Assembly (NCBI GenBank): GCA_000320545.1
Contig: ADNK01001550.1
Span: 1 to 43,669, forward strand
From: Bigelowiella natans CCMP2755
Lineage: Eukaryota; Protista; Cercozoa
DNA: 43,669 nt
Direction of reading: 5' to 3'
Positions 1,170 to 29,500 of this stretch are shown in pieces; the stretch's first letter is position 1; each line of letters begins with the position of its first letter. Under the pieces are notes generated by a model, which worked only from the letters and a program-made list of their open reading frames with translations, ran no database searches and had not been told where the DNA came from. A program made the position numbers and the translations under genes.

Positions 1170-5208
<4,039 letters not shown>

Positions 5209-5480
5209 TTGAAGGAAGAGGCTTTAATTTAATTATATACCTGCTGTCGATCGTATCACTACGGATATGTAATCTATTGTGCTGCCATATGCATATACGT
5301 CACGATTATAATATATTGCGGCGGTCATAAATCTAGTTTACATCATCACGGGAAGAACGATGGGTGCCTAATGATGAATATTGGTGTTATAATTGTTACC
5401 ACGCATGCATGCACGTGTGCCCATGTGCTAGATATCACAACTGTATCAAATGTGTAACGAATGGCATGAATTTTTAATTA

Positions 5481-6700
5481 AGAGTCATTGAGAAAATGTT
5501 TGCGCGTTCATGTGCGCCCAGGTGTGTGCTTTTTGCGTGCGTGTGCTGAAACTTCGCACGTCCATGAAGCTGGTGTGCACACACCCTCATGAGCTTGCAA
5601 AACTTGTGGCACGCAAATGCAAATGCGCTAGCGTGTTCAAAAGTGGCAAGAATTTTTTGATTTTCGCCCGCTGGCAGGCGTTGAAAAATGAGGTTTTCAA
5701 GCTGAAATTCGATTCGAAAAAAAAATCAAATTTGAACCTCGCACAGGCTCCAGTGTGCTTCCAATGTCCAATTGCAACGATTGAGCGCGCCAGGCCGCAC
5801 GCGCAAAGCACAGTTTGTTCAAAACCCACTCGTCACCGGGATTGACACAGTTGTGCGATGCTGGATGCATTTGCATGCGCGCATGCGCAGTGGTCGCGCA
5901 GCGCCATCATTGTCCCAACTGTTTTCGTCTGCTGTGGTCTGTCGTTTTGCAGTGCGGCCATTTCGAGGAAGTGAGACATGTTCGCATGATTCGCACGCAG
6001 CTGAGATTTTTCCTGTGCATGTGAGTAGTGAGCGTGTTGGCATTCAAAACTAGAAAACACTGTTGCGCAGCGCTGCACATTGACAATGATTATGTCCTGC
6101 AACTCTCACACAACTTTTTGCACTTTTCGCAGATTGTGATGGCGTTTTAGGCCTTCAAAAATGACACGTTTGAGGTCGTTTCTCGGTCAAAATTGGATTT
6201 TGACGCTCGGCCTAGCTGCAGGTCTATGGGTGTGTTCTGTGATCACGTTCATCAATGTGATGCGATGCGCGCACAACTCATCTCTTGCGCTGCAGCCAAA
6301 CGTTGCTGGGTTTGCATGACTGTTACCGAGTTCTGCAGATGATCATCAGCGCCAGTCATCATCATTGCTGAGCCGCAAACGTAGCGATCTGTGACGATGC
6401 ATCAATGTGCAAAGGCACGGCACAACTGAACAATAGAACAAATTGTGAACAACAATGCAATCTGACAAAAATTCAATGGAACGTCGTTTAGTGAAACTTT
6501 GAGTTTCCTGATTTCGTCACGCGAGCGAGGTCAAGCCGTGCGAGGAATGGCTTCACATCTAGACATGACCACGTACACTAAGTACGCACACACACATGGC
6601 ACAGAGAACATGAATTCATGTGCGTGCGCTTAGCTGGCATTTGAGTGCACATGCCAGATGACCAATGTCCGACGTGCATGCGTGTCAACGAACATGCACC
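5481..6700. other. TpA-depleted, TpG/CpA-rich intergenic block between convergent genes (possibly a decayed non-autonomous repeat)
   Basis: One TpA (within CTAG) in 5481-6025; later TpAs are mostly in TAG/CTA context; CpG is retained; no microsatellites and no credible exons. Confidence 0.8.
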
Positions 6701-7031: not shown

Positions 7032-7669
7032 TCATTCACTGCTACCTAGCCTTGCTTTTTGCCCTCCTTTTTCCTCGATTCCAATCCTACCAAACAAACA
7101 AAGCAATGGGAGACGTGACCAGACGACAGCATTCACAATGCCTGCATGTCCACTGGATGTGCTTTCACGAATCGAGAACATGAGAACATGGGACAGATGA
7201 GCACACGCTTTTACCCAATGCCCCCTCACCCCCCCCCTTCTCCTTTTCTGTCTCAAAACCGTAGAAAGGGTTTCGGTGACTCCTATACATCGACCAAGCT
7301 ACTGCATCTCCACCGCTATTCACACCACCGGCCTTCAACAAAAGGCCTTTCTACGCACCCACCCTTTCGGACGAGCAGTCCGAACCATATGCAGTGGAGC
7401 ACCCAGAGTGTCCCTAGCAGCGTGCACAATATGAACCATAAACGCAACAAATATACAGCATTTATCACACAACACACGAGTTGTAGAATTATAAGATTCT
7501 AAAGTGCCAGTCGGCGCAATTCAGACCAGTCCCCAACCCTATTCTCAAGGCCGCTTCACGACGATGTGTCGCGCTCCGGCATATTTTCATTAACATTGGC
7601 GCATCGAGGATAATATGTTGTACCGAGTAAGAAGAAGAAAGGGTATCGAACGGATTCCTACGGTTTAAA

Positions 7670-7706
<37 letters not shown>

Positions 7707-7776
7707 AATATCTCAATATTTACATACACGCGTGTGTGATTAAGCCTCTAGCTGCATCTCAACTAAACGCACGCGC

Positions 7777-7816
<40 letters not shown>

Positions 7817-8299
7817 AAGACACACAACCGACCAAGAGCTGCGAAACATCTGTAACCGTCAATATCGAGTACAAAACGGCGGATGCAAAGAACCTGCACA
7901 GAGGAGTAACGGTTGGTGTGGTGGTGATGATAATGATTGAAAAGCACAAAGAGGACGCAGATATTAAACACATTTGTATATGTGTATACATGTAAATACA
8001 TGTCGCAAGAAGGAATAACAAGATCCAGCAGCTGCTACATACCAGAGTCGCCAATATGCCCACATGAGTAGCACAAGCGGGTAGGTTGCCTTCACGCTGG
8101 TTCAAACCATAATGAGTTTGATTAGCATATAATTTCAAACACAAAATGTATAATATCGTGAAGATAGTATCGTTTTGAAAGTGACCACGAAACACAAACA
8201 CGATGTAGCTACCACTCTCTCGCTCTAGCTCACCCTCTCTCCCCCCCTCTATCTTTAATCTCTCTCTACCCAACCGCCTCCCTCTCCTCCCCTCTCTCC

Positions 8300-8337
<38 letters not shown>

Positions 8338-8499
8338 CACACATCAATCGATGATATCACGCAAAAACCTAACCCTATGTCGTAGTTAGCAGCCAAAAAT
8401 AGCCGCAAGGTTGCAAGCGGCAAATCCTGCAGCATATAAATGAGTTGTTAGGGAACATTCTTTTAACTATAATACATTGATATATGTGCAAATATACTT

Positions 8500-8532
<33 letters not shown>

Positions 8533-9255
8533 CATATATATATTATAATATTTACAATTCCTTTCCGCAAGCGGTATGACTTGTCCCACCCCTACCTTTC
8601 CGCCAAGGCCCTTGAGCACACGTTATACGCACCATTCTCTCCCCCCCCCCCCCCCCCCGCGCATAGCCACATATCACAGGGGTACTGTGCATATTTTAGT
8701 CATGTGTGAGGTCGCACGATACCGAGACGTCGTGCAGCCAAAGCACCAGCGACCCTATACGCTTTGGAGTGACCGAACCTATCCGCAATCATCACCAAAC
8801 AGCGAAAACCGTTTGGCTACGCAGTTAGAGAGCCTGCATCCGCATGGGAGAAGGGGGTGAAAGGGGGGGGAGGGGGGCATATCGATTCTAACTCTAGTTA
8901 CAGCGCAAGTGCGACAAAATTGGCAAAACGCCGAAGATCACGAGAAAGGTGCATTACTCGTTCCATAGCTGAAGAATATGAGCACATTCGTCACAGCGTG
9001 ATGGACGAGCTACATTAATACAACGGTGAGAAATGGCAATGGCAAAATACACAATTTAGTCACTCTCTAGAGAGAGAAAGGCCGCGAAAAGAAGTTTAAG
9101 CGTCGGGGAACACAACCAATCATTGACATTTTGGCTGAGAAGGAAGAAATGTGCCATTTCGTGAGGGAATTCTACCATTTTAAAATCGGGTTTCTCTCCC
9201 TGCAGCAGCTTATATGCCTGGTGACGAATTACGCGTTTTTAGCATACAATGGCAT

Positions 9256-9286
<31 letters not shown>

Positions 9287-9651
9287 ATAAAACGCATCGT
9301 ACCCACTGGCAAATATGTGCCGGTGTAGTTGACATTGCTTCTGGCATTGGAAAAACCGTAAAAGAACCCTGCCACTACCACTGACACTAATATATTGCGT
9401 AGCTATAGCTAAATCCCTTTTCGAGAACATGTATGCTACTCTTTTCTTCCTAGAAAAATCATTGTAATGGCCCCCCCCACAACGCTCGCCGTCCAAACCT
9501 GATAAATCCAGGCCTCGAAGTGAAACTGCAGAGGAGGAGTATGAGAGAAGGGGAGAAATGAAGAGACGATAAGGAGGAAAAATATTCAAATCGCAATACC
9601 ACGCAAATGTAAGGTACAATACGTCTACTTGACATATATATATATATATAA

Positions 9652-9687
<36 letters not shown>

Positions 9688-9755
9688 TATATAATATTTA
9701 TATATTCATACATATATGTATTCTACAACAAGCACACGCATAAATAAATGCATAT

Positions 9756-9792
<37 letters not shown>

Positions 9793-10387
9793 CTATTTCT
9801 ACATATACATTTCTCAGCATGCATCACTTACCGCTCCAGAGACGAAGTAATACAGCTGTAGATCTGCGGTGACCTCTGCATCCTACCAAAACGCATTGTG
9901 TTTCAGGTTGGCAAACCGCCTTTAGAATCGAGACTTAGAATCAATGATCAGGTGCTGCGGCCAACTAGGGTGGGGACCGGCAGCATTAACAAACAGGGCT
10001 CTCTCCTCCTTAAAGAATGCATCAAAAACCGCGTTGAACGACTTTTGAAAGTGGTTGGACTAGTAGATGTCAGCACGTAAGACACTCGAAAACAAAGGCA
10101 TATTCCGGAGATCGAAAAAGAAAGAAAAGCGGCGCTATTTCTAATGAGCAAAGCTGCTTTAGATGTCCTCCTTCTACATTTTGATGGTAGTTGGGTTGTG
10201 TTGCTGCTCACTTCGTCGTAGCACTGATATATGTCCTTGTACCAGACGGATGAAACCACGATCTTGTACCTTGAGGGGAAGTGAAAAAAAGGAAGGACCG
10301 ATGAAGAGGCGAAGGAGCATTGGTGGCAGTCAGATCAATACATTATGTCCTCAAGATTCATTTCAATAATGATACATACACAACACA

Positions 10388-10444
<57 letters not shown>

Positions 10445-10777
10445 TTCCTTTGTAATAAATACAGAGGGTAATTCCTCTATGTATGTATTTTACAACTGAC
10501 TATCACTGACATTTTGAATTTGGCATTCATTACCCATAAAGCACGGTGAAACAGTGCGACAGCAGTATGAAGATCCGCGTGTGGATCTGAGCATAATTTT
10601 GAATTTTGCGAGTGGACAAACGTCATACCACTGCTGGACATGGCAGCTACTGCAGCCTTCTTTAAACTCCAAAAACCATCGCAAAGCACGCACACAGGCA
10701 TACATTCCCCCGCCCCCTCTCACCAACATACATATGTATATTGAAATGTTATATACAATAAATATCTACTGTAAAGA

Positions 10778-10818
<41 letters not shown>

Positions 10819-10918
10819 TTGTATATGTATTTGTATATATTAACACGTAGCAAACCCTGAAGCTCATATTCTCAAACTCCTTCAATTCTTTGTCCTTTGA
10901 TGGTTTTCCTTTTGACTC
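7032..10918 (-). other. TLC (TRAM/LAG1/CLN8) domain, ceramide synthase-like with intact Lag1 motif
   Basis: Exons: KELKEFENMSFR (~10857-10918); ADLQLYYFVSGA|FHFEAWIYQ; AYKLLQGEKPDFKM (9176-9217); LVHHAVTNVLIFFSYGT (8958-9009); RIGSLVLWLHDVS (8723-8778); DLPLATLRL; LLMWAYWRLW; LGTLWVLHCIWFGLLVRK. Matches the ceramide synthase pattern DFxMxxHHxxTxxLxxFSY..RIGxxxxxxHDxSD. Confidence 0.9.
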
Positions 10919-11335
10919 TGCAGAGGAATATCATCGAGGCCATCAGTAACAATCCAGACTTACATATACACAAACCCCCTCCCTGAGATATTTGCCTCTC
11001 ACACGCACGCATTTGAACATATAACTTAGGTAGACAGTATAAGCGTCTCTTTCCTCTCTCTCTCCCTCTCTCCCTCTCCCTCTCTCTCTCTCTCTCTCTT
11101 TCTCTCTCCCTCTTCTTTGTCTTTATTATATATTATTATATATCATATTCCTTTTTGTACAATACCGGTAACAGCCTCCCCTTGTTCTTGTTCCAAAGAC
11201 GCATCAGCTAATTCAACCAAAAGCATAAATGCAAAAGTTCCAATGGCCATAGCGTCCGTTTGGGTTTCTCACATTCGCTCATGCGTACATGCCGTTCCAA
11301 TGTGTGTGGATATGAGGCTATCAACGTGTGATGTG

Positions 11336-11396
<61 letters not shown>

Positions 11397-11855
11397 TTGT
11401 GTGTGTGTGTTTGTTTTTCGTTAAATAATTCCAACGTTGATTCCATATTTTTAAAATAAAAATTTGATCCACAGCGCACTCAAAGGACCTCGCAGGCATG
11501 ATGACCTCTCCCTTTACTCTAATGTGCTTGTGCGACAACGACAACGACGAATCATACTACTGCTTTTTGCTACTGCTCTTAGTGTTACCGGAGTCTTTGG
11601 AAACCATCGCTATTGGGGAGGGATAAGAAGCATTGTAACTATTCGAACGTAGTTCCAAAGCGAGCAAGGGAAAATGCGGGTGGGGAAGAGCGTGAATCGT
11701 GGGGCAAATCAGATGATACATACGGTTTTATCATGCTTGGATTGTATTAATTTCGTTTCCCCCCTCCCTTCGGCTTTACTTTCTCTCTTTTTTTCTCATG
11801 CTCACGCGCGCGCTTTCTGCATCTCGGCAAGACGTTATAATAAATTGAAATATAC

Positions 11856-11890
<35 letters not shown>

Positions 11891-12268
11891 TATGGGTTGA
11901 GTAATATGTAGAGTAACGTGTTGGAAATATATCATGAATACATCTGAATTTTTATGCGAGCACGACATGGCAAACAATAAAGAGAGAAGAATGGGGAGGG
12001 CGCGCGAGGGTGGGGGGGAGGGGGAGGTTATTGAGGAGTAAAGAACACTCTTACAAAGAGCGGAGAATCAACGGTATCTGTTTCAAGCACAATCGCCGAA
12101 CCTGACACCAATGGACGATGGATATTAGGAAATATCATAGAGGGCAGGGACACACGAATCAGTATCCGTTATAATGCTTGCAATGGCGTTTCTTGCATCA
12201 TAAGCAGAGTTTTTTTTACATGGGACTGTTTATCTACTACTCCTACTACTACTATTGTACTACTAGTG

Positions 12269-12302
<34 letters not shown>

Positions 12303-12674
12303 GACCACTGACTACTACTACTACTACTACTACCGCATTGACTGAAGCGATACAGATAAGGAAGAGAAACACTAATTTGTCTGCGACGGGCTGATGATTT
12401 ATAAAGCAGGTTAGAGAGATATAGAGAGAAAACGAGAGAGGGAGGGGGGGGGAGAGAGAAGGGGAGAGGGAGACAGCCTTCGATTGGAAACACATCCTGA
12501 CCAACATGCAAAATAGGCACTTGCAACTGCCGTTATGGGATTGATTAATCTACTACCGGTTTTTTCCAGACGAAGTCAGGTGTAGAGCGATTCAGCACGT
12601 ACCATAATAGCAGCGTGTATGCCGTGCTGCAGTTTAGCGTGATACGAAAGCATAAATCATATATGGTTAAAAGA

Positions 12675-12712
<38 letters not shown>

Positions 12713-13149
12713 AATGTATGCGTGTGCGCGAACGTTGTTGTGCAATATTGGTTTGCTCATTTTTTAGGTATATTTTCCCGTAGATATGTGTGTGTATGTG
12801 TGTGTGTGGTGGTTAAAGGAGCATCTTCTTTTGCTTCGGATTAGCACAAAAATGCTTCGCACACGTGTGCTGCATAAAGCCGGAACTTTTACATTTAGAA
12901 CAAGCACCATTCTATTCTATCCAACGGCTATCGCAAGGACACGCGCAATTTCACCTGAAGTGCCACCAGCTATGGCCTACCCAAGGGAAGATCATCACCA
13001 CGCCTCTAGAGTAAGTTTCGGATTCAAGATTCCAAGGGCACGGAGTACAACATCGTGCAGAGGAAACGCATTATCTCAACTAAAGCCAAGCACACCGCTT
13101 GACAGCGACTAAGCGTGTCAATGCCGACGATGCTGATCTCATGAAGCAT

Positions 13150-13180
<31 letters not shown>

Positions 13181-13314
13181 CGCGCGCGCGCATTGACAGA
13201 TATGTGTGTATTTTAGAAGTTGGAGTAGTTGCTACCCATACAAAGCTGGAACGAAATAGATGATCTGATATCCTGACCACTGCTCGTCATAATGCAGCAG
13301 CACACAAACACAAA

Positions 13315-13394
<80 letters not shown>

Positions 13395-13822
13395 CCACAT
13401 ATAATTTTATAAATTCGTACGCATAGAAATATCAGATGTTAAATGTTGTTAGTAAATACTGTGTACATCGGCGCTGTAAACCAAGAACAAGGCATCATTG
13501 CAATATTAGAGGCCACCACCATACCCAGAAGTAGAAGATATTCATTCCATAATAGACACCGATAAGAACCTAGTTTAATTCCATATATATAATGTGAGCG
13601 CGAATGCATGCATGTGTGTGTGTGTGTGCGTGTGTGTGTGTGCGTGTGTGCGTGTGTGCAGGTACATAATTTTCCCTTAATTATTACGCAGTGAGTCAAA
13701 TGAAAGAAACGACGAGAGACTTCGATCGTGTGAAAGGTACCGTGAGAAATCTGGGGACTTTTCTTTTGATGTCGTACAGCCTAAGGAGAGACTCGATGAG
13801 GAAATACGCATGCTATGAAAAA

Positions 13823-13856
<34 letters not shown>

Positions 13857-13874
13857 ATACACACACAGAGAGAA

Positions 13875-13950
<76 letters not shown>

Positions 13951-14306
13951 CGCCATATTCAAATAAATATCGCAACTAAATCAAGAAAACTATTTAGCTT
14001 ATTCGCCCGACGACCTCAGCAAAAAACCAGAGAATAACCCCCACTGGCACTGCTTAAACAGCTTCCACATTTCTGCAAAATTACACGTGTAAAGATTACG
14101 CCTTCACACAATAATGGCGTCTCGTCAAATGGCCTCTGCCCCGTGCTCCTGTTAATCTGGCGCATATTGCAAGAAATACCGGGAAGAGGCTCCGAGTATC
14201 TTGAGTAGAATCCCAATGTCCACGTGGTCGCTACAAGCGCCGGTAGTACAATATCACTCGAGCCGTAAGGCATGTACCTGTGATATATGAGCATCACGTA
14301 CTCATC

Positions 14307-14340
<34 letters not shown>

Positions 14341-15296
14341 ATCATCAGCAGCATCATCATCATAAGGCCGCCGATAGGATAGCTTCGTATCGTGCTGTCA
14401 GTACCCGTACATGAAGGACATCTGCAGCAATAATGCAAGCGCTGTAAACCTGGTAGCAAATGATATGCATTTCATCTTTCGGTATTGTAAGTATACACAC
14501 ACACACTTACTCTCACACACACACACTCACACACACGCACACACACGCACACGCACACACGAAAACCTATATACTTATATAAATAAATGAATAAAAATGT
14601 GAATATATACTGTCTCTATGCGATTTCACCAGTATTCTCCGATTTCAGAATGCTGGATCATCAAGAAGAGCTGAAACGTAGTCATTGCACACACACAAAA
14701 GAGAGCACTATGAAATGCCAAGAGCTTTGGCTCGAAACGAATAAAGTCTCCCCTCTGCCAACCCTAGCACTCCCCCCCCCCTCCACCAAGTCGCAGTACT
14801 ACCTCAAAAAAGAGCGGGGCCATTATCACTCCTTGCGAGGGCAGCAACGCAATCGGACGACGAGACAACAAGAAGCAGCAGAATGCAAGTGAGGCATTGA
14901 AGAGTTGGTATATCCTAAGACTATTGGCTACGCCGGAGGCAGTCGCGAGGCGCACTTGGGTACCGTCGGTCAATATTGACAACTTGTTGTTGTTGGCAGT
15001 TTCTCAGTCGTGTGTCAGTTTCTTCCGAAGGAAAGAAGAGAGAGTACCACGTTGCCTCTCTGTGTGTGTGTGTGTGCACGCGCGCGTGCGCGCGTCCTTG
15101 TGCTCTAACACTAAGGCAAACCGTTAGTCATTCCAGCATCAACAGCTCTCCAATAGTCGCGAAGTGAGGCGTGAAATAACCCAGAAGCTATGCCTATTGG
15201 AAGTTGAGTCTTTGTCAAACCAATACGACAATTTTCAGATGAACATATACATCACACACACACACACATACACACACACACACACATGCGCGCGCA

Positions 15297-15334
<38 letters not shown>

Positions 15335-15710
15335 TAATAGCAGCAATCCGACCAAGCCATATATTCGTCAGCCCATACAATATTCCAAAGCTTGGGTATC
15401 TGATGAGTTTAAAAAGAGTTTCTCGAAATCCCCTCTATCAATATACTCTCTCTCTCTCTCTCTCTCTCCCTCTGTGCGGCGTGTACGCGTGTATGCGTTT
15501 CTAAACCAATTTGCATTTATGTATCAGTGTACCGTGTGTTTATGCATGGCGTGAATCAATCTTACTTGGCCATCTCGTTCCGAGGCTCGCCGTCGCTTGA
15601 CATATCCGCGTATGAAACTGCGAAAGGCAAACATCAAGCATACCATTGCTGCGCGTACATTTCAAACCCATCTTAGTGAAGGAGCACTCACTGCCACGAG
15701 AGTACACATG

Positions 15711-15748
<38 letters not shown>

Positions 15749-16096
15749 ACACACAACGGCCTTCGTGCGTGCAAGAAGATGTCTGTAACATATAATTCAT
15801 GTAATATTCTCTCGACCCCTGCTGACACTGTGTAGACATGAAGAAGTTGGCTCTCATATTATGATATTGATATTTCTTACATAATGAATTACCACTACCA
15901 ATACTACCACTACTACCACTAGCACTACTACTGCTGATAAGGTTGCTACTACTACTAGTGATACAATCACTGCTGCTGCTGCTGCTGCTGTTATTAGTTA
16001 GCATTAATTCCAGAATACCTCCAAGGACCACGATTCCGATGAAAGAGTACGCGAGAGACGACCACGCGTTCAAAGGCTGTGCATAACTGTATAATG

Positions 16097-16136
<40 letters not shown>

Positions 16137-16872
16137 TTTCTGTCATATTCTCCGTCTGTTTACTTCTTCACATAGAGATAACAGGCCTCTCGGCACATTG
16201 CATAGTCTGAAACAGAGATCAAAACCCGCCACCCGCAGATCGCATCGATTCTGTCAATCATATCGCTTCTACGAGGGAAAAGCTAGGATAACTATCGAAA
16301 GCATACATGCAACCCTCCCGTTCCGGTGTTCTGTAGGACATCGTATCCCACCCTCCCTGTCGCTCAAACGCAGAATACTCACGGGGTCCATGATCGCCAC
16401 CACTTGTTTTGTCTCGGTTCACTGGTCAACAAGTCATCGCTCTCGCCATACTGCGGTCGGATAACACAGCAAGGTTTTGATATTTCCCTTTCATAGACGC
16501 TTTGTGTAGACACGCATGAGTGTGAAGCAACCCCCCCCCCCTCTCCTCTCTCCCTCTCTTATGTCGTCCGAGTCCTGTTGCATGTGGAATGCGCGTGCTG
16601 CCTCTCATCATGATCTCCATATATGCTTTCAACCACGAAAGGACGGAGAGATGGACCTCGTAATGTTTGAGGTACTTTGCCACCATTTCGTCTCGTGGAC
16701 ACGAATGAGTCCACACGCTCCGACCGAGGAAGCCTTGCAAAGTCAATCAATTGTTACCGAAATCCCGCAAAGAGAAGCATATTGATGAAACCAGTTTTCA
16801 GGTCGAACCTAGACATGCGACCACCACAGCTGCGAGAGGAAAGAGCCATTCCATTGCCGGAACCTCTATCAT
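7032..16872 (-). CDS. Putative fused sphingolipid enzyme: N-terminal CREST (alkaline-ceramidase-like) hydrolase plus C-terminal TLC/Lag1 ceramide synthase; more than 30 short exons
   Basis: Continuous chain of minus-strand GT-AG exons separated by microsatellite introns, starting with a hydrophobic N-terminus (MEWLFPLAAVVVACLGFLG, ATG 16854 or 16872). No intergenic-type gap between the two domains. Exon phases in 11.0-12.0 kb are unresolved, so two tandem genes remain possible. Stop position is approximate. Confidence 0.6.
12333..16872 (-). other. CREST-superfamily (alkaline ceramidase-like) multi-TM Zn hydrolase domain
   Basis: Spliced sequence ..MCREPVISIYAQPLNAWSSLAYSFIGIVVLG..YPSFGILYGLTNIWLGIASGLFHASLRDYWRAVDAGM..(TM helices)..FYFWLCMGHSWWHFSTAYTLLLW. 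It contains the CREST SxxxH (exon 15122-15193), the downstream Asp, HxxWH (exon 12955-12976) and an N-terminal QPxNxWS motif. Confidence 0.85.
13149..13191. repeat. Compound (TG)n(CG)n microsatellite
   Basis: tgtgtg...tgcgcgcg...cgc; a similar (CA)n(CG)n tract lies at ~34188-34235. Confidence 0.9.
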
Positions 16873-17747: not shown

Positions 17748-20421
17748 ATGGAAACCCGCCCTGAGAGGGCCAAGTCCAATGGGACGCAAGTTTCCCTTGG
17801 CCAATCCACAGACTATGAGCTGGAGTATTCGAAGACTTTGGGTACTTATATTTTGCATGATAGCAGGTGTAACGCATGGTGTGCTAAGAGATAGATAGGC
17901 TCAGCTGCGAGAGACGCTTGCAACGTGTGCCGACCCAACCCGCTGATGAACTTCGCCTTTGATACGAAATGCTTAAATGCCTTCCTCGAAACTGAACAGT
18001 AACATTTAACAAAAAAAATGGACGAATTGAAAATGCGGCCTCGCGAGGACGCAAGCGAACTATCCGCCGCATATTTCTGCACATGAGGCTATCAATTAAA
18101 TTATAATGTCAGACACCCCTTCTCTCCTCAAAGAGGACAGCAATTGGAGGGAAGAACCAGATGCGGACAAAAGCGAACGTAACAGTCGCATAGAACAAGA
18201 AAACAGTATCGACAGCGCGACCAACAATTCTATTCACAATCCCCTCATGGCTGCGTCTTCCCCTGGCCTTCTCTCCGCACGCGTGTCAGCTGCTTCTTTG
18301 GGAGCTGGGATACGACGATTGTCGATAAGCACCTCGTCACGAGCAGGTCTTCTGCAACCAAATCGCTCTCCGAAAGCCGCAAGAGTGACGAGTTTCGAGA
18401 GAGGCACGTGCGACAAGAAGGAAGAGAGCGGTCGCCAACCCCTGAAGCAGCATCCCAGCTCAGTACAGTCAATCCTTCAACCCACTGCTGCTCATCACAG
18501 GAAGCGTACTAGCCAAAGCTCTAATGGGCAGTCGAACAATACACAAAGTGTTATGAAGTCAGACGAAAACCTCCCCTCCCTGGAGAACCACGGCAGCAGT
18601 CACACCGGGGCAGCCGCCGCGGGGAGGGGGAGCAGCAGCACAAACCTAGCATTTACAAGATTGAGTATCTCAGCACCCCGTTAGTACCAACCGACACGCG
18701 AATGAAAATGAAACTAACTAATACGACGTGTAATTATCGGATGTATTTGAATGCTTTAAAGGAGAGCCAAAAAAATAGATAAAAGGGATTGGAAAGGGCG
18801 CATGATCTGTGTACATGGATTAGTCCCCCCCCCCCCATTCCACAATCTTACGTAATCGCCAAAATTTCCATATATTTTCGAATCAGGCAAGCGCGGGTCG
18901 AGCCCTGATGCTCGCTACACATCCGAAACCACGAATAACACAGACTTTTCCTTCTTTGGAATGTCTCCGAAGCCGCGCCCCACCCCCTACCCGTCATCCA
19001 AAGCCGCTGGGGCTGCGCGCTCCAGGGGGGGGCGGAAAATTTTTCGCATCGGCCGCACGATACGAATTCCTTCTCCAACATCAGACATCGTAGCTCCACA
19101 GCACACCGGCCAAAGTTCCGAGGGGAAGCAAACACTGTATAGAAAGTCAAGAAGTAGCATGTCGCACAGCCTTGCTTCGCCTGTCTTCAGCCCCCCATTG
19201 TTCTATGCCTCTCGGCGATTTTCGTTTACCGGAGCTTCCAAAGGGGGGGGGGACACGAGGAGCAGTGGAGCGCGTAACCTTTACTATAGGCGATATCGTC
19301 ATTATCGATTTAAGGTTGGCCTGATCTTCACCGCATGGAAATTACATCTCTCCTCATTTCCTTTATCCTCTCAAACGGATTACGACACGCTTCTCTGTCA
19401 TTATTTTCCATAGCACGGCTGCCTTATTCATAAACTCATGTTGCGTTCTAAGAGCCGTAATTTCCCCCTCCCCCACCCCCCCTCCCCTCATTCTCCCTCC
19501 CCCCTCCTTTCTCTTCGTTTCTCAGACTAATCTAGCACAAGAGCTAACGCTGATCAGGACAGCCGTCCGCCCCTCCTTCTTGCTTGATCGTAGAAGCAAA
19601 GTCTCCCTCGCAACTGACCCCCTCCTCACCCATATGGAAAGCACTCTTGCAGCACCAAACGACGCCGCTATACCCTCCCCCCCCAAAGCAGCCACTCCGT
19701 CCCTTGAGGAGAAGAACGGCGCGGGAGGGGGCGGGGGCAGGAGCGGTAGTAGAGCCATATTCGTGTTAGATAGCGAGAAGCGAATAAGGGCGAGAGGCTT
19801 CCGCGAATGGGTTGTTTCACAAAACCAGCGGGTATTTCAAGCAGGATTCTTTCTTTCCGGCATCATCATCGCGACTCTACTCGTGTTATTCAGCCTTGAT
19901 TCGAGCGACAGCGACGATGACGAAGGGGGCCGGGGGGGGCGGAGCACTACCATCGCTCTGTTGGCTGCTGCTTTACTCTTCGTTGCGGTCGTCGCAGCGT
20001 CTACAATAACTAGCTATCGGGGGTTCTTTTGGCAAGGAGGGGGGGGGGGGGATGAGGGTCAAAGCAGCCACGCGGGCTCAGATGCCCCACCTCCTAGCAA
20101 ATCGCACTATCAGCATCGTCACCATCTGCGGCACTTTGATGCGTCCAGATGTTACTCCCCCTGCTGCTGCTGTTTGAAGCGAGGTCCAACCCCCTCGAGG
20201 AAGTCAGTAGGAGCAAGAAATGACGGCGGACATTGCACCAGCCCTTACGTGAGCAGCGGGACTGCTCAGAGGCAGAGCGTATTCGTCTTCATTCTCGCAG
20301 CATTCCTTCAGGCTATTTTCGTTGTCTCTCTGTAGGTTCATTTTTTAAGGGGGGTGATGGTAGAGGAGACGGGATGTATTTCGAATGGATAAAGGCTAGG
20401 GAAAGAGTGCACGAGAGATTG

Positions 20422-25489: not shown

Positions 25490-26350
25490 ACTGTGGCCGA
25501 TGAAACAATTGAGTTTGTTGTTGACGTGTCGTCTCAGCTCCCGAAATTGCTTTGATCTCCGCTGAAACTTCACCATCTTTGCAGCATTTTGTTCCTGCTG
25601 CTTTGTAAACACTGAACGCTGTGTTGACCGCGAAGTGCAACCTTTTGCACACTCATCCCCACGGACATTGCCACAAAGAAAACAACGCAGAGTTGCATTT
25701 CCGCGCGCGCATGATTGCACTACTGCGATCGCAATTTCACTTTGTGGATGAACGCAACAGCTCAACGGCTAGACGGGCACTTTGGCATTGTTGCGAGAGT
25801 CATTGCACAACATTTCTAGATTCATCAGGTAGTAGCTAGAGTAGCGAGGTGCAGGTTGCAAGCGGTGTGTGTCCGCGTCTCAATTTCGATGTGTGGTCGC
25901 CCACCTAGCATAGAGCAGCCTGCATCTGCTGTGAAGCAAACACACCGGACCTTGGGACTCATCTTGTGCATGTTCTAGTGTTCTTTTTAGCGTGGTCAGA
26001 GTGCCGCACATCTAGAGAATGCATCGAGTTGCATGCGATTGCGTTGCGAACAGCATCAAGTGTATGCTGATTTGTTTGCTGCACACTCAAACGTAAAACG
26101 GCTTGATGCTTACATTTTGGGTGTGATTCCTTATTTATGAGCGGGCTTCTCAAGCTGTGAGCACTGCTAAACTGATCTGCTCTTCATGCATACTAGCACA
26201 CAAAGTCTAAAACTGTCCGATACTAGTTCTTGGTGCGTCGTATGGTTCTTCTAGTGACACGCTCAAAGTCAATCTAGCAATGCCCGCGTTGAGTTGCTTT
26301 GGAACTAGTGTGGGTTGGTTTGAACAAAATGTTGTCCGATGTGGCTTATT
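25490..26350. other. TpA-depleted, CTAG-sparing intergenic block between convergent genes
   Basis: Very few TpA in 25490-25800; in 25770-26020 nearly all TpA are CTAG or NTAG; TG/CA-rich; CpG retained. Confidence 0.75.
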
Positions 26351-26551
26351 CAGAGAGCAATGGTATTAGTTCCCGAACAATGTAATTTTCCACCAACCTC
26401 CCTGTTGATTGCACAGAATTAACGTCTAACGTCAGCACTTGTTTTGAACAGAAAACTCTCACCAGTCGATTCAAAACAACATTAAAAACTGCTTTACTTT
26501 CAGAAATTTTTCGTTCGTAATTTAATTTTTCTCATCGGCATGTGATGTCTA

Positions 26552-29500
26552 TCAGAAGAAAGTACCATAAACTTGAGTTGAATTTGAGATCTCATCCAAG
26601 GAGGCCTTTGCATCCTTTCTTGACAGCATGAGAATGTTCTCAATTCCCGAAAAAAAATTCAGATGCTCCCTCAGGATGAAACGTTCGCTAGCCCGTGCTA
26701 CTGAATTGTCGCGAAAGATTTTCGGACAGATTGATAAAAAAGACATCAGCCTGTGCATGAACATGACGATTCAAAAAATGCTGTGCTAAATATGACAAAA
26801 TTGGATAATTTTTCAAAACTAATTTAATTTTATCACCTGCGCAGAATTGCCGTGATAAGAAATCCAAATTACCATCTTCATCACAATCATTATATAAATG
26901 TGCATTAGATGACAAAATTTAAATCGAAGATAAATTTAGGATGAAATTTTTCTCACCACATGATGAGTGTCTGTTGTTATTTAAAACACTTCGAAGACAG
27001 CAACAAAATCGTTTCTAACAACAAAGACACATAAATATTAGACTTCAGCTTCATTCTCTCACCATATCTCTATTTACGTTGGTACAGACCCTCTATGAAG
27101 CAGTTAGTATCCATCTTAGACCTTACCAACACTAGTTTCTCTTCTCTGATCCCCAAAGGTTTCACAACGCGAACTTGTTTTGCCAAACTTGAATAATCTC
27201 CACCTAATCGGTTCTTTTCCTCACTTTTATAAAAACACGCAAAAAACACCGTGAACTGTTGAATCAACGTTTGAACTAGATTTTCCATCTGATTCAATAA
27301 ATCAGACATAAGTGATGCTATTTGCACATTTGAACATTAGCAACCATGTGAGCAACTCCTTCAAAGTTTTTATTCCTGATATCTCTTCGAGTTTCTCTGA
27401 TGAAGCAACTTCCACTGAAAAACAACAAATTATATTTAATATTCGTTTTATACGAAGGGAAAATTATTGTTACTTACATCTGAGGAAAGTTAAAATATCT
27501 GCAAGATTGTTGCTCGCAGGTTGTGTTATTACGCTCCCCTCCATAGAGCTATTTCTTATCTGCTGACGAATACGTCTTGATGCAACTTCAACATTCTCAC
27601 TCTCCTCATGTTCCCCGCCAGAAAGTGTAAGAAGACCTGACATCTCTGATGCACCACGTTGCCATACAAACATGTTCAGTTGGTACATCCATGGCATAAG
27701 AGTTTCAAAAATCAATTTATGTACTGAACCTTCTAGTAGATACGACAAAAATTTCTGGTATACTATTTAAATACCTCGTTTGTGATGCATCATACGTTTG
27801 CGTAGGTTATCGTAGAACTTGTTATTTTCTTTCTTTGTTGTAGTTGCTAAACATGATTCTTTATTTTCACAATTTCTAGTTTTCATATCTACTCCATCCT
27901 GGGACAAATGTATAACAATCTCCGCCATGTCCCGACGGTTTTTCGGAAGGGCAAAACCTGATTTATTAGAATATGCCTATGTGTAATGACATGCAAACCT
28001 GAATTTGTATATATAATTTCTATTCCAAGGTGTAAATTAATTTGCACAAATTAGTGCAACATTTATAATATTGTACCCATAATTCTAGAACTTCGATGGA
28101 ACATAATGAAAAATGCAAGAACATTTTAGATAGATTCGTCTTAGGATAATATTAATATTTGGACGATTGATAGAACAAACCCTAGAATTTAAGTTTCGTG
28201 TACTATCGGAATACCATAATGTGCGAGAAATATGTGATTGGGTTTCTTTCCATATGTATCACAAGCTTCTACTCCGCTTCCAATCCCACCCTCTCCTAAA
28301 TAAAATAAATACACACTCGGCATGGCATAGCAGTGCATACAATGCATTTCTTCAATTGTCAAGTACACTAATTAATACTGAAACTTTAAGAAAGGGGAAA
28401 AGGATAAACTGTTACAATTTTTGACATACGTGCAGTCATGCGGAAATGCGCTGTTTTTGCTAGTCTTGATTTCATGAAACGCCAATCGCAGTTATGGTCC
28501 TCGCTGTGGTTTAGCATATCTGCTAATGGAACCTGCAAAATAGTTCTTTCAACTCTTCCATACACAGATATATCTGTACAAACTCAAAGAAACCATGGTC
28601 AGCATCGTTGCGCCTTCCTCATTGCTACTACTCGATACAGCTGCCATGCTTTCCCAATCCAATCGGAAAACACGAGAGGACACCATAAATCGAGCCCATA
28701 CAAAGTCCTTAGATTAAAAAGTAATCACCACAAAAGAATACGAAAAGCAATGTTACAGGATTCATATTCAACACGCAATCTTCTGGAAGATTGCTCCAAA
28801 TATCAATCAACGATAAATTAAAGGAGGAACATACTGGGGGGGGGGGGGGGGGAGAGAAAAAGAGAGAAAAAGGAAAAAGAAAAAAAGAATAATTGAATCT
28901 ACAAATACAAAGCATTGAATACTAATGATAAACCTTCAAATTGATGTTTTGCTTGAAAATTTCGTCTTCACTGCAAAGCGACTTAAAATCGTCCTACAGA
29001 CAAGGTATATATATCATCTATGGCAATGATAAGTGCACCAAAAATTAAATATATCAGCACACGCACATACACACACACAATTACATATTTACACATATTT
29101 TTATTTTATTCTAACTATTACTGTTACATATGCACATTTTATTACAAATTAGCAAACTATCTACCAAACAGCAGCACCATCATTGAGTTGGAAAATATGC
29201 GATGAGAAGCAACTGTTAAATTTCGTTACATAACATACGTGTATAATTTCAGCGAAAGCCTTAACTTCTTTCCCCGCCAGAGTGCCCCTAAGAACATGAA
29301 GAAACGCATTATATCGGAGCTTCACGCAGTCTGTAAGGACAGCTTTCCAAAATATGCAATGCCAACTACCTTAGCTCATCATCAATGTTGATCCTTCTCT
29401 TCGCATCGTCTGCGCAATCGATAGTTTTCGCACAGTATTTCCACACAAAATTAATCGCATTGACACAAACTTACATCAATAAAAGATCACAGAAATGCGT

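What the first reader, a model, noticed from the sequence alone, without database searches (positions are those of the whole stretch)
7032..16872. Apparent ceramidase-ceramide synthase fusion: opposing sphingolipid activities in one locus
Seen: a CREST hydrolase with all catalytic motifs (SGLFH, D, HSWWH) is followed on the same strand by further TM-encoding exons (DKLVFLFLICIASVNA|VRRLCLKQIP). These lead to a Lag1-motif TLC domain (PDFKMLVHHAVT..RIGSLVLWLHDVSD), with intron-like DNA throughout and no spacer. Known: alkaline ceramidases deacylate ceramide and Lag1/CerS enzymes N-acylate sphingoid bases; they are separate genes in yeast, plants and animals. Inference: a bifunctional ceramide acyl-chain remodelling enzyme (deacylation-reacylation with channelling) or a lipid-sensing regulated synthase. 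I do not know of a described example. Even as two genes, the tandem pairing would be a notable pathway mini-cluster.
Basis: partly seen in the sequence, partly recalled or inferred. Interest (0 to 1): 0.85.

Follow-up and report, generated by a model that had tools for sequence, protein, structure and literature searches.

The report
Probable ceramidase-like/ceramide-synthase fusion gene
A marine alga (Bigelowiella natans) appears to encode a lipid-cutting enzyme and a ceramide-building enzyme as one membrane protein, a pairing I could not find described, but the joining splice has not yet been seen in RNA.

Summary
A hand-built model of 34 GT-AG exons (16872-7046, minus strand) reads without a stop as 564 aa. 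Residues 44-261 match a ceramidase/CREST profile (48 bits; S109, H113, D124, H247, H251 intact). Residues 360-561 match a ceramide-synthase profile (65 bits; H442/H443, D473/D476, W544 intact). The genome is Bigelowiella natans. The halves join through a 166-nt phase-0 intron whose donor ranks 2nd of 33 and beats all 581 decoy GTs, with a branch point. Topology fits without an extra helix, and the protein ends in KKxx. Two genes would need a stop and a start 38 nt apart. No ortholog was reached, because exon-wise searches cannot reach 564-aa proteins. 'Ceramidase' is unproven: the N-half is a long-branch CREST protein lacking the ACER calcium site, and ordinary ceramidases and a CerS exist elsewhere in the genome. 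About 80% one gene; best mechanism (about 45%) is lipid deacylation followed by N-reacylation from acyl-CoA. The scan's index showed no such fusion elsewhere in this genome (the only one it covers).

The parts
7046..16872 (-). Predicted single gene, 34 exons, 564 aa, about 15 TM helices
   Evidence: Local model, all introns GT-AG, no internal stop. Exons 1-3, 14 and 19-22 are the least certain.
16809..16872 (-). Exon 1: ATG plus extra N-terminal hydrophobic segment (aa 6-24)
   Evidence: phase links to exons 2-4
12557..16206 (-). CREST/ceramidase-like 7-TM domain, exons 3-16 (aa 44-261)
   Evidence: 47.9 bits against the combined profile, collinear;
15122..15193 (-). Exon 7: SxxxH motif (S109, H113) and catalytic Asp D124
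   Evidence: H-to-D spacing of 11 as in ACER3 His81/Asp92 (PMC9436119)
12955..13005 (-). Exon 15: HxxxH motif (H247, H251)
12557..12626 (-). Exon 16: end of CREST TM7 plus start of the short luminal linker (contains an NRS sequon)
12391..12556 (-). Junction intron, 166 nt, phase 0. If retained: TAA at 12547-12545 ends a 279-aa CREST-only product; an ATG at 12507 with a weaker GT at 12501 could start a CerS-only product
   Evidence: Donor 2nd of 33 and above 581 of 581 decoys; acceptor near the median; CTAAC 24 nt upstream of the AG. Not seen in RNA.
12055..12390 (-). Exons 17-18: CerS TM1 equivalent followed by RR..K
   Evidence: Hydropathy; position before the TLC match. Sequence similarity of this part alone is not significant.
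7363..10917 (-). TLC / Lag1-type acyltransferase domain, exons 21-33 (aa 360-561)
   Evidence: 65.1 bits against the CerS profile; 19.1 bits against the genome's own ordinary CerS
8424..9217 (-). Lag1p motif over exons 26-29: KPDF, H442/H443, D473/D476
   Evidence: equivalents of CerS6 His211/212 and Asp239/242 (PMC11919693)
7046..7086 (-). Last exon: basic tail ending KKQG* (KKxx ER-retrieval type); no DxRSDxE motif
   Evidence: motif definition from PMC8789539

Best explanation
One gene makes a 564-aa ER membrane protein: an extra N-terminal helix, a 7-TM Zn-dependent CREST hydrolase, a 13-residue luminal linker, and a 7-TM Lag1/CerS-type acyltransferase with a cytosolic KKxx tail. SHOWN here: both domains, their catalytic residues, and an in-frame splice path. 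INFERRED: the junction is spliced (about 80%). From established mechanisms, the CREST site (three His plus Asp and Ser) hydrolyses a lipid acyl bond, and the TLC site loads acyl-CoA on the first His and passes it to an amine such as a sphingoid base. Both sites face the cytosolic leaflet. INFERRED function: the N-half removes the fatty acid from a ceramide or related N-acyl lipid and the C-half re-acylates the freed base with a chosen acyl-CoA. That would be one-polypeptide acyl-chain exchange, added to the ordinary ceramidases and CerS that the genome already has. The free fatty acid cannot be reused directly, so only the base could be handed over.
For: Stop-free 34-exon path. Junction donor stronger than every decoy, correct phase, branch point present, 9 nt before the in-frame stop. 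166 nt matches the species' mean intron of 184 nt, while intergenic DNA averages about 1.5 kb per gene (32.9 Mb over 21,708 genes; PMC12730881). Flanks leave one promoter gap (about 1.2 kb) and one TpA-poor 3' block after the TLC end; none at the junction. ACER3 has a luminal C-terminus (10.1101/348219) and CerS6 a glycosylated, hence luminal, N-terminus, so no extra helix is needed; Lys+Arg are 31 on the predicted cytosolic side and 12 on the luminal side. No 110-350-aa protein holding exon 4 was found in a database that does hold Bigna1 and MMETSP proteins. Catalytic residues are intact in both halves.
Against: No ortholog was found. The ACER calcium motifs DWCExN and AEF are changed to MQCAERP and AQP, and E33G abolishes ACER3 activity. 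The N-half is a very long branch outside the ACER group, so its substrate is open. DxRSDxE is missing. The splice matrix was trained on my own model's 33 introns, and the helix boundaries were chosen by me.
Confidence: 0.45

Rival explanations
1. One fused protein, but the CREST half is not a ceramidase. It is either a sensor or regulator of the acyltransferase (PAQR/AdipoR-like), or a phospholipase-type deacylase paired with a lysolipid acyltransferase (a one-protein Lands cycle).
For: CREST members include PLA2- and PLD-type enzymes (PMC13562381). TLC proteins TLCD1 and CLN8 are lysophospholipid acyltransferases, and the TLC gene fld-1 suppresses the CREST gene paqr-2 in worms (PMC11838012). 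The N-half lacks the ACER calcium site and is unplaced.
Against: The C-half has CerS-type features (xxDF, HH, HDxxD, Trp in TM7) and scores 65 bits against CerS, while the genome's non-CerS TLC gene L004 gives only an insignificant match. The N-half keeps all five catalytic residues.
Confidence: 0.25
2. Two separate products: two tandem genes, or a locus whose main RNAs are a 279-aa CREST-only form (junction intron retained, TAA at 12545) and a CerS-only form (ATG at 12507).
For: Both stand-alone frames exist in the sequence: an in-frame TAA, and an ATG with a usable GT at 12501 (score 4.3). A TATAAA lies at 12403. No RNA evidence for the join.
Against: Only 38 nt between stop and start; a very strong in-phase donor just before the stop; no 3'-end signature at the junction; no deposited stand-alone product found. 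B. natans nuclear introns are spliced in over 90% of reads at the median (PMC6009652).
Confidence: 0.17
3. A fused protein in which both halves make ceramide: the CREST half works backwards with free fatty acid, the TLC half with acyl-CoA.
For: Yeast Ypc1 and Ydc1 make ceramide in reverse when Lag1 and Lac1 are absent (PMC4713442 abstract).
Against: That reverse flux is described in cells lacking CerS; nothing here favours it.
Confidence: 0.08
4. Decaying duplicate fragments with no function.
For: Both halves are highly divergent and ordinary copies exist elsewhere in the genome.
Against: 34 exons in frame, all catalytic residues kept, and 20 transcriptome-sized runs hold 6-22% of the locus words, against 7.1% expected from all exons and 3.3-3.7% from either half.
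Confidence: 0.05

Closest known systems
Alkaline ceramidases (ACER3, yeast Ypc1/Ydc1; Pfam PF05875, CREST superfamily)
   Same: 7-TM order, SxxxH, Asp 11 residues later, HxxxH (HSWWH), basic TM6-7 loop, predicted cytosolic catalytic face
   Different: No DWCExN/AEF calcium site; only 23 bits against an ACER profile; extra N-terminal helix; continues into an acyltransferase
Bacterial ceramidase-domain proteins (PF05875, mostly Alphaproteobacteria)
   Same: Collinear ER..A.PLNA, GS..LPAL and GH..WH motifs; 15 bits, P 7e-7
   Different: Not grouped with them in the tree; they are stand-alone proteins of about 220-250 aa
Lag1/Lac1/CerS ceramide synthases (TLC domain, PF03798)
   Same: TM1, a polar loop, then a six-TM TLC barrel; HH, DxxD and the TM7 Trp kept
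   Different: RKDF changed to KPDF, 3 extra residues between HH and DxxD, no DxRSDxE, N-terminus replaced by a CREST domain
PAQR-2/AdipoR2 with FLD-1/TLCD1 in animals
   Same: A CREST protein and a TLC acyltransferase linked in one membrane-homeostasis pathway
   Different: Separate genes, other subfamilies, phospholipid substrate

Membership tests
CREST superfamily | SxxxH at end of TM2, Asp at start of TM3, HxxxH at start of TM7 (PMC3146951) | tested here: met
   S109/H113, D124, H247/H251, collinear with the profile
CREST superfamily | Seven core TM helices | tested here: inconclusive
   Profile alignment covers all seven segments, but hydropathy alone finds four peaks in the N-half; no fold was predicted
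Alkaline ceramidases (ACER) | Calcium-site motifs DWCExN and AEF | tested here: not met
   MQCAERP and AQP in the model; motif from 10.1101/348219. Exon 3 is among the less certain exons.
Alkaline ceramidases (ACER) | Branches within the ACER group | tested here: inconclusive
   Outside the 95/93-supported group, but on a branch of length 3.8
Alkaline ceramidases (ACER) | Ceramide hydrolysis | not testable with these tools
   Needs an assay
TLC domain family | Six-TM TLC domain by profile similarity | tested here: met
   65.1 bits, P 3.6e-22, local CerS profile. Exon-wise Pfam scans were blank because the pieces are 20-32 aa.
Lag1/CerS clade | Lag1p motif with His-His and Asp-x-x-Asp; TM7 Trp | tested here: met
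   H442/H443, D473/D476, W544
Lag1/CerS clade | C-terminal DxRSDxE motif (PMC8789539) | tested here: not met
   Tail reads ESRKKEG; the genome's ordinary CerS also keeps only DxR. So it works like a CerS, but strict clade membership is not shown.
Lag1/CerS clade | Acyl-CoA-dependent N-acylation of sphingoid bases | not testable with these tools
   Needs an assay
True gene fusion | In-frame splice path with proper signals | tested here: met
True gene fusion | Transcript or protein that spans the junction | tested here: inconclusive
True gene fusion | Same architecture in related species | tested here: inconclusive
   No ortholog of any tested exon found; sensitivity is low

The most novel reading that the evidence does not exclude
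A natural single-chain enzyme that couples a Zn-dependent CREST deacylase to a Lag1-type N-acyltransferase and exchanges ceramide acyl chains by passing the sphingoid base between its two sites, conserved across chlorarachniophytes.
Probability: 0.3. Interest if true: 0.8.

Novelty: new variant of a known kind. Interest (0 to 1): 0.6.

Why it matters
Ceramidases and ceramide synthases are known as separate, opposing enzymes. A natural fusion would let one test directly whether breakdown and re-synthesis are physically coupled, using one cDNA and two single-site mutants in yeast. It would also give a first functional clue for a divergent CREST lineage and echo the genetic link between CREST and TLC proteins in animals. 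The limit: both parts are known families, and so far it is one predicted gene in one genome.

Tried and rejected
The joined model was only compared in local scripts with sequences already fetched. Blank exon-wise searches: Pfam, PDB, Atlas (35), 50% representatives with exon 11 (21; one spurious repeat protein), homolog searches with the exon 11 and exon 4 frames, metagenome scan with exon 11 (38), viral scans, plasmids with L001 (29). A padded one-exon alignment query was simulated (62, 64) and dropped as too weak. Supplements of three chlorarachniophyte papers gave nothing. My early guess that the N-half is bacterial-type was not supported (ACER profile 23 bits, bacterial 15 bits, tree unresolved).
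Full report
Source. The genome has 91,405,885 bases in 3,736 contigs. One of its ceramidase genes is identical to jgi/Bigna1/89336, and the published Bigelowiella natans assembly is 91.4 Mb in 3,736 contigs (PMC12730881). The window is therefore from this chlorarachniophyte alga.

Observation. I built an exon model by hand from splice sites, phase and family motifs: 34 exons from 16872 to 7046, every intron GT-AG, 564 codons, no internal stop. Exons average 50 nt and introns are 75-477 nt. Exons 1-3, 14 and 19-22 are the least certain; exon 22 gives a 7-residue insertion against other CerS proteins.

The two domains. Exon-by-exon Pfam and PDB searches were blank because the pieces are too short. 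I therefore fetched reference proteins and compared them locally. Residues 44-261 score 47.9 bits (P 7.7e-17; best shuffle 8.4) against a profile of eukaryotic and bacterial ceramidase-family proteins. S109, H113, D124, H247 and H251 correspond to the five residues essential in ACER3 (PMC9436119). The ACER calcium motifs are not kept, and the domain is a very long, unplaced branch. It is a CREST hydrolase; that it is a ceramidase is not shown. Residues 360-561 score 65.1 bits (P 3.6e-22; best shuffle 6.4) against six CerS sequences. The His pair, Asp pair and TM7 Trp of CerS6 are all kept; the DxRSDxE tail is absent. The two motif exons tested are single-copy in the genome. Three other ceramidase genes and other TLC genes, including an ordinary CerS, lie on other contigs, so this locus is an extra rather than the housekeeping pair.

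One gene or two. Exon 16 ends CREST TM7 and reaches a GT at 12556, nine bases before an in-frame TAA. In a leave-one-out matrix this donor ranks 2nd of 33 and above all 581 intronic decoy GTs. The acceptor at 12391 is near the median, is in the same phase, and has a CTAAC branch sequence 24 nt upstream. A second route through 12526-12502 is also in frame. The two-gene reading needs a stop at 12545 and a start at 12507, 38 nt apart, in a genome with about 1.5 kb of intergenic DNA per gene. The flanks show a divergent gene from about 18100 and a convergent kinase gene ending near 5200. The TpA-poor block that other scan notes link to gene 3' ends occurs after the TLC stop (observed/expected 0.38) and not at the junction (0.92). 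ACER3 ends in the lumen and CerS6 starts there, so the two join without an extra helix; predicted cytosolic loops carry 31 Lys+Arg against 12. A search that could have found a 279-aa stand-alone CREST product found none, although the database holds Bigna1 and MMETSP proteins; this is weak evidence. I put a single gene at about 80%.

What could not be shown. Twenty transcriptome-sized runs from six studies hold 6-22% of the locus words; all exons together predict 7.1% and either half 3.3-3.7%. This suggests both halves are expressed, but the runs are only guessed to be RNA, retained introns could inflate the share, and it says nothing about the join. No ortholog was reached, and those searches cannot see 564-aa proteins, so conservation is unknown.

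Mechanism. CerS uses a His nucleophile and acyl-CoA entering from the cytosol. ACER-type sites hydrolyse an acyl bond at a Zn centre. With both sites on the cytosolic side of one chain, the simplest function is deacylation followed by N-reacylation, handing over the base and not the fatty acid (inference, 0.45). Rivals are a CREST half with another substrate or a sensing role (0.25), separate products (0.17), two synthetic routes (0.08) and decay (0.05).

Novelty. Three full-text searches and targeted reading of the CREST survey and a fungal sphingolipid survey showed no CREST-TLC fusion; subscription journals and domain-architecture databases were not covered. The scan's index, which covers this genome alone, had no other such note. 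It is a new combination of two known families, probably real, unconfirmed at RNA level and of unknown spread. Interest 0.6.

Noticed in passing
window 5400-6600: Strongly TpA-depleted block (observed/expected 0.03-0.38) between the 3' end of this gene and a convergent MAP-kinase gene; a weaker one lies near 25500-27000.
   Followed up: partly
window 2500-5200 (+): Intron-rich MAP-kinase-like gene ([27 protein letters not shown]), convergent with the fusion gene.
   Followed up: no
window 18100-19410 (+): Ser/Arg-rich open frames starting MSDTPSLL, divergent from the fusion gene with about 1.2 kb between them; not identified.
   Followed up: no
L005 889-2950 (G000:C3215): Ordinary intron-rich ceramide synthase of the same genome; its tail keeps only DxR of the DxRSDxE motif.
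   Followed up: partly
L001, L002, L003: Three further ceramidase-family genes in the genome; L001 is jgi/Bigna1/89336 with close relatives in MMETSP transcriptomes.
   Followed up: partly
L148 89-1081 (Ga0314680_10217719): Stand-alone divergent CerS-like protein from a metagenome collection with VHHAVT, VLWLHAASD and a KKKA end, and no CREST part.
   Followed up: partly
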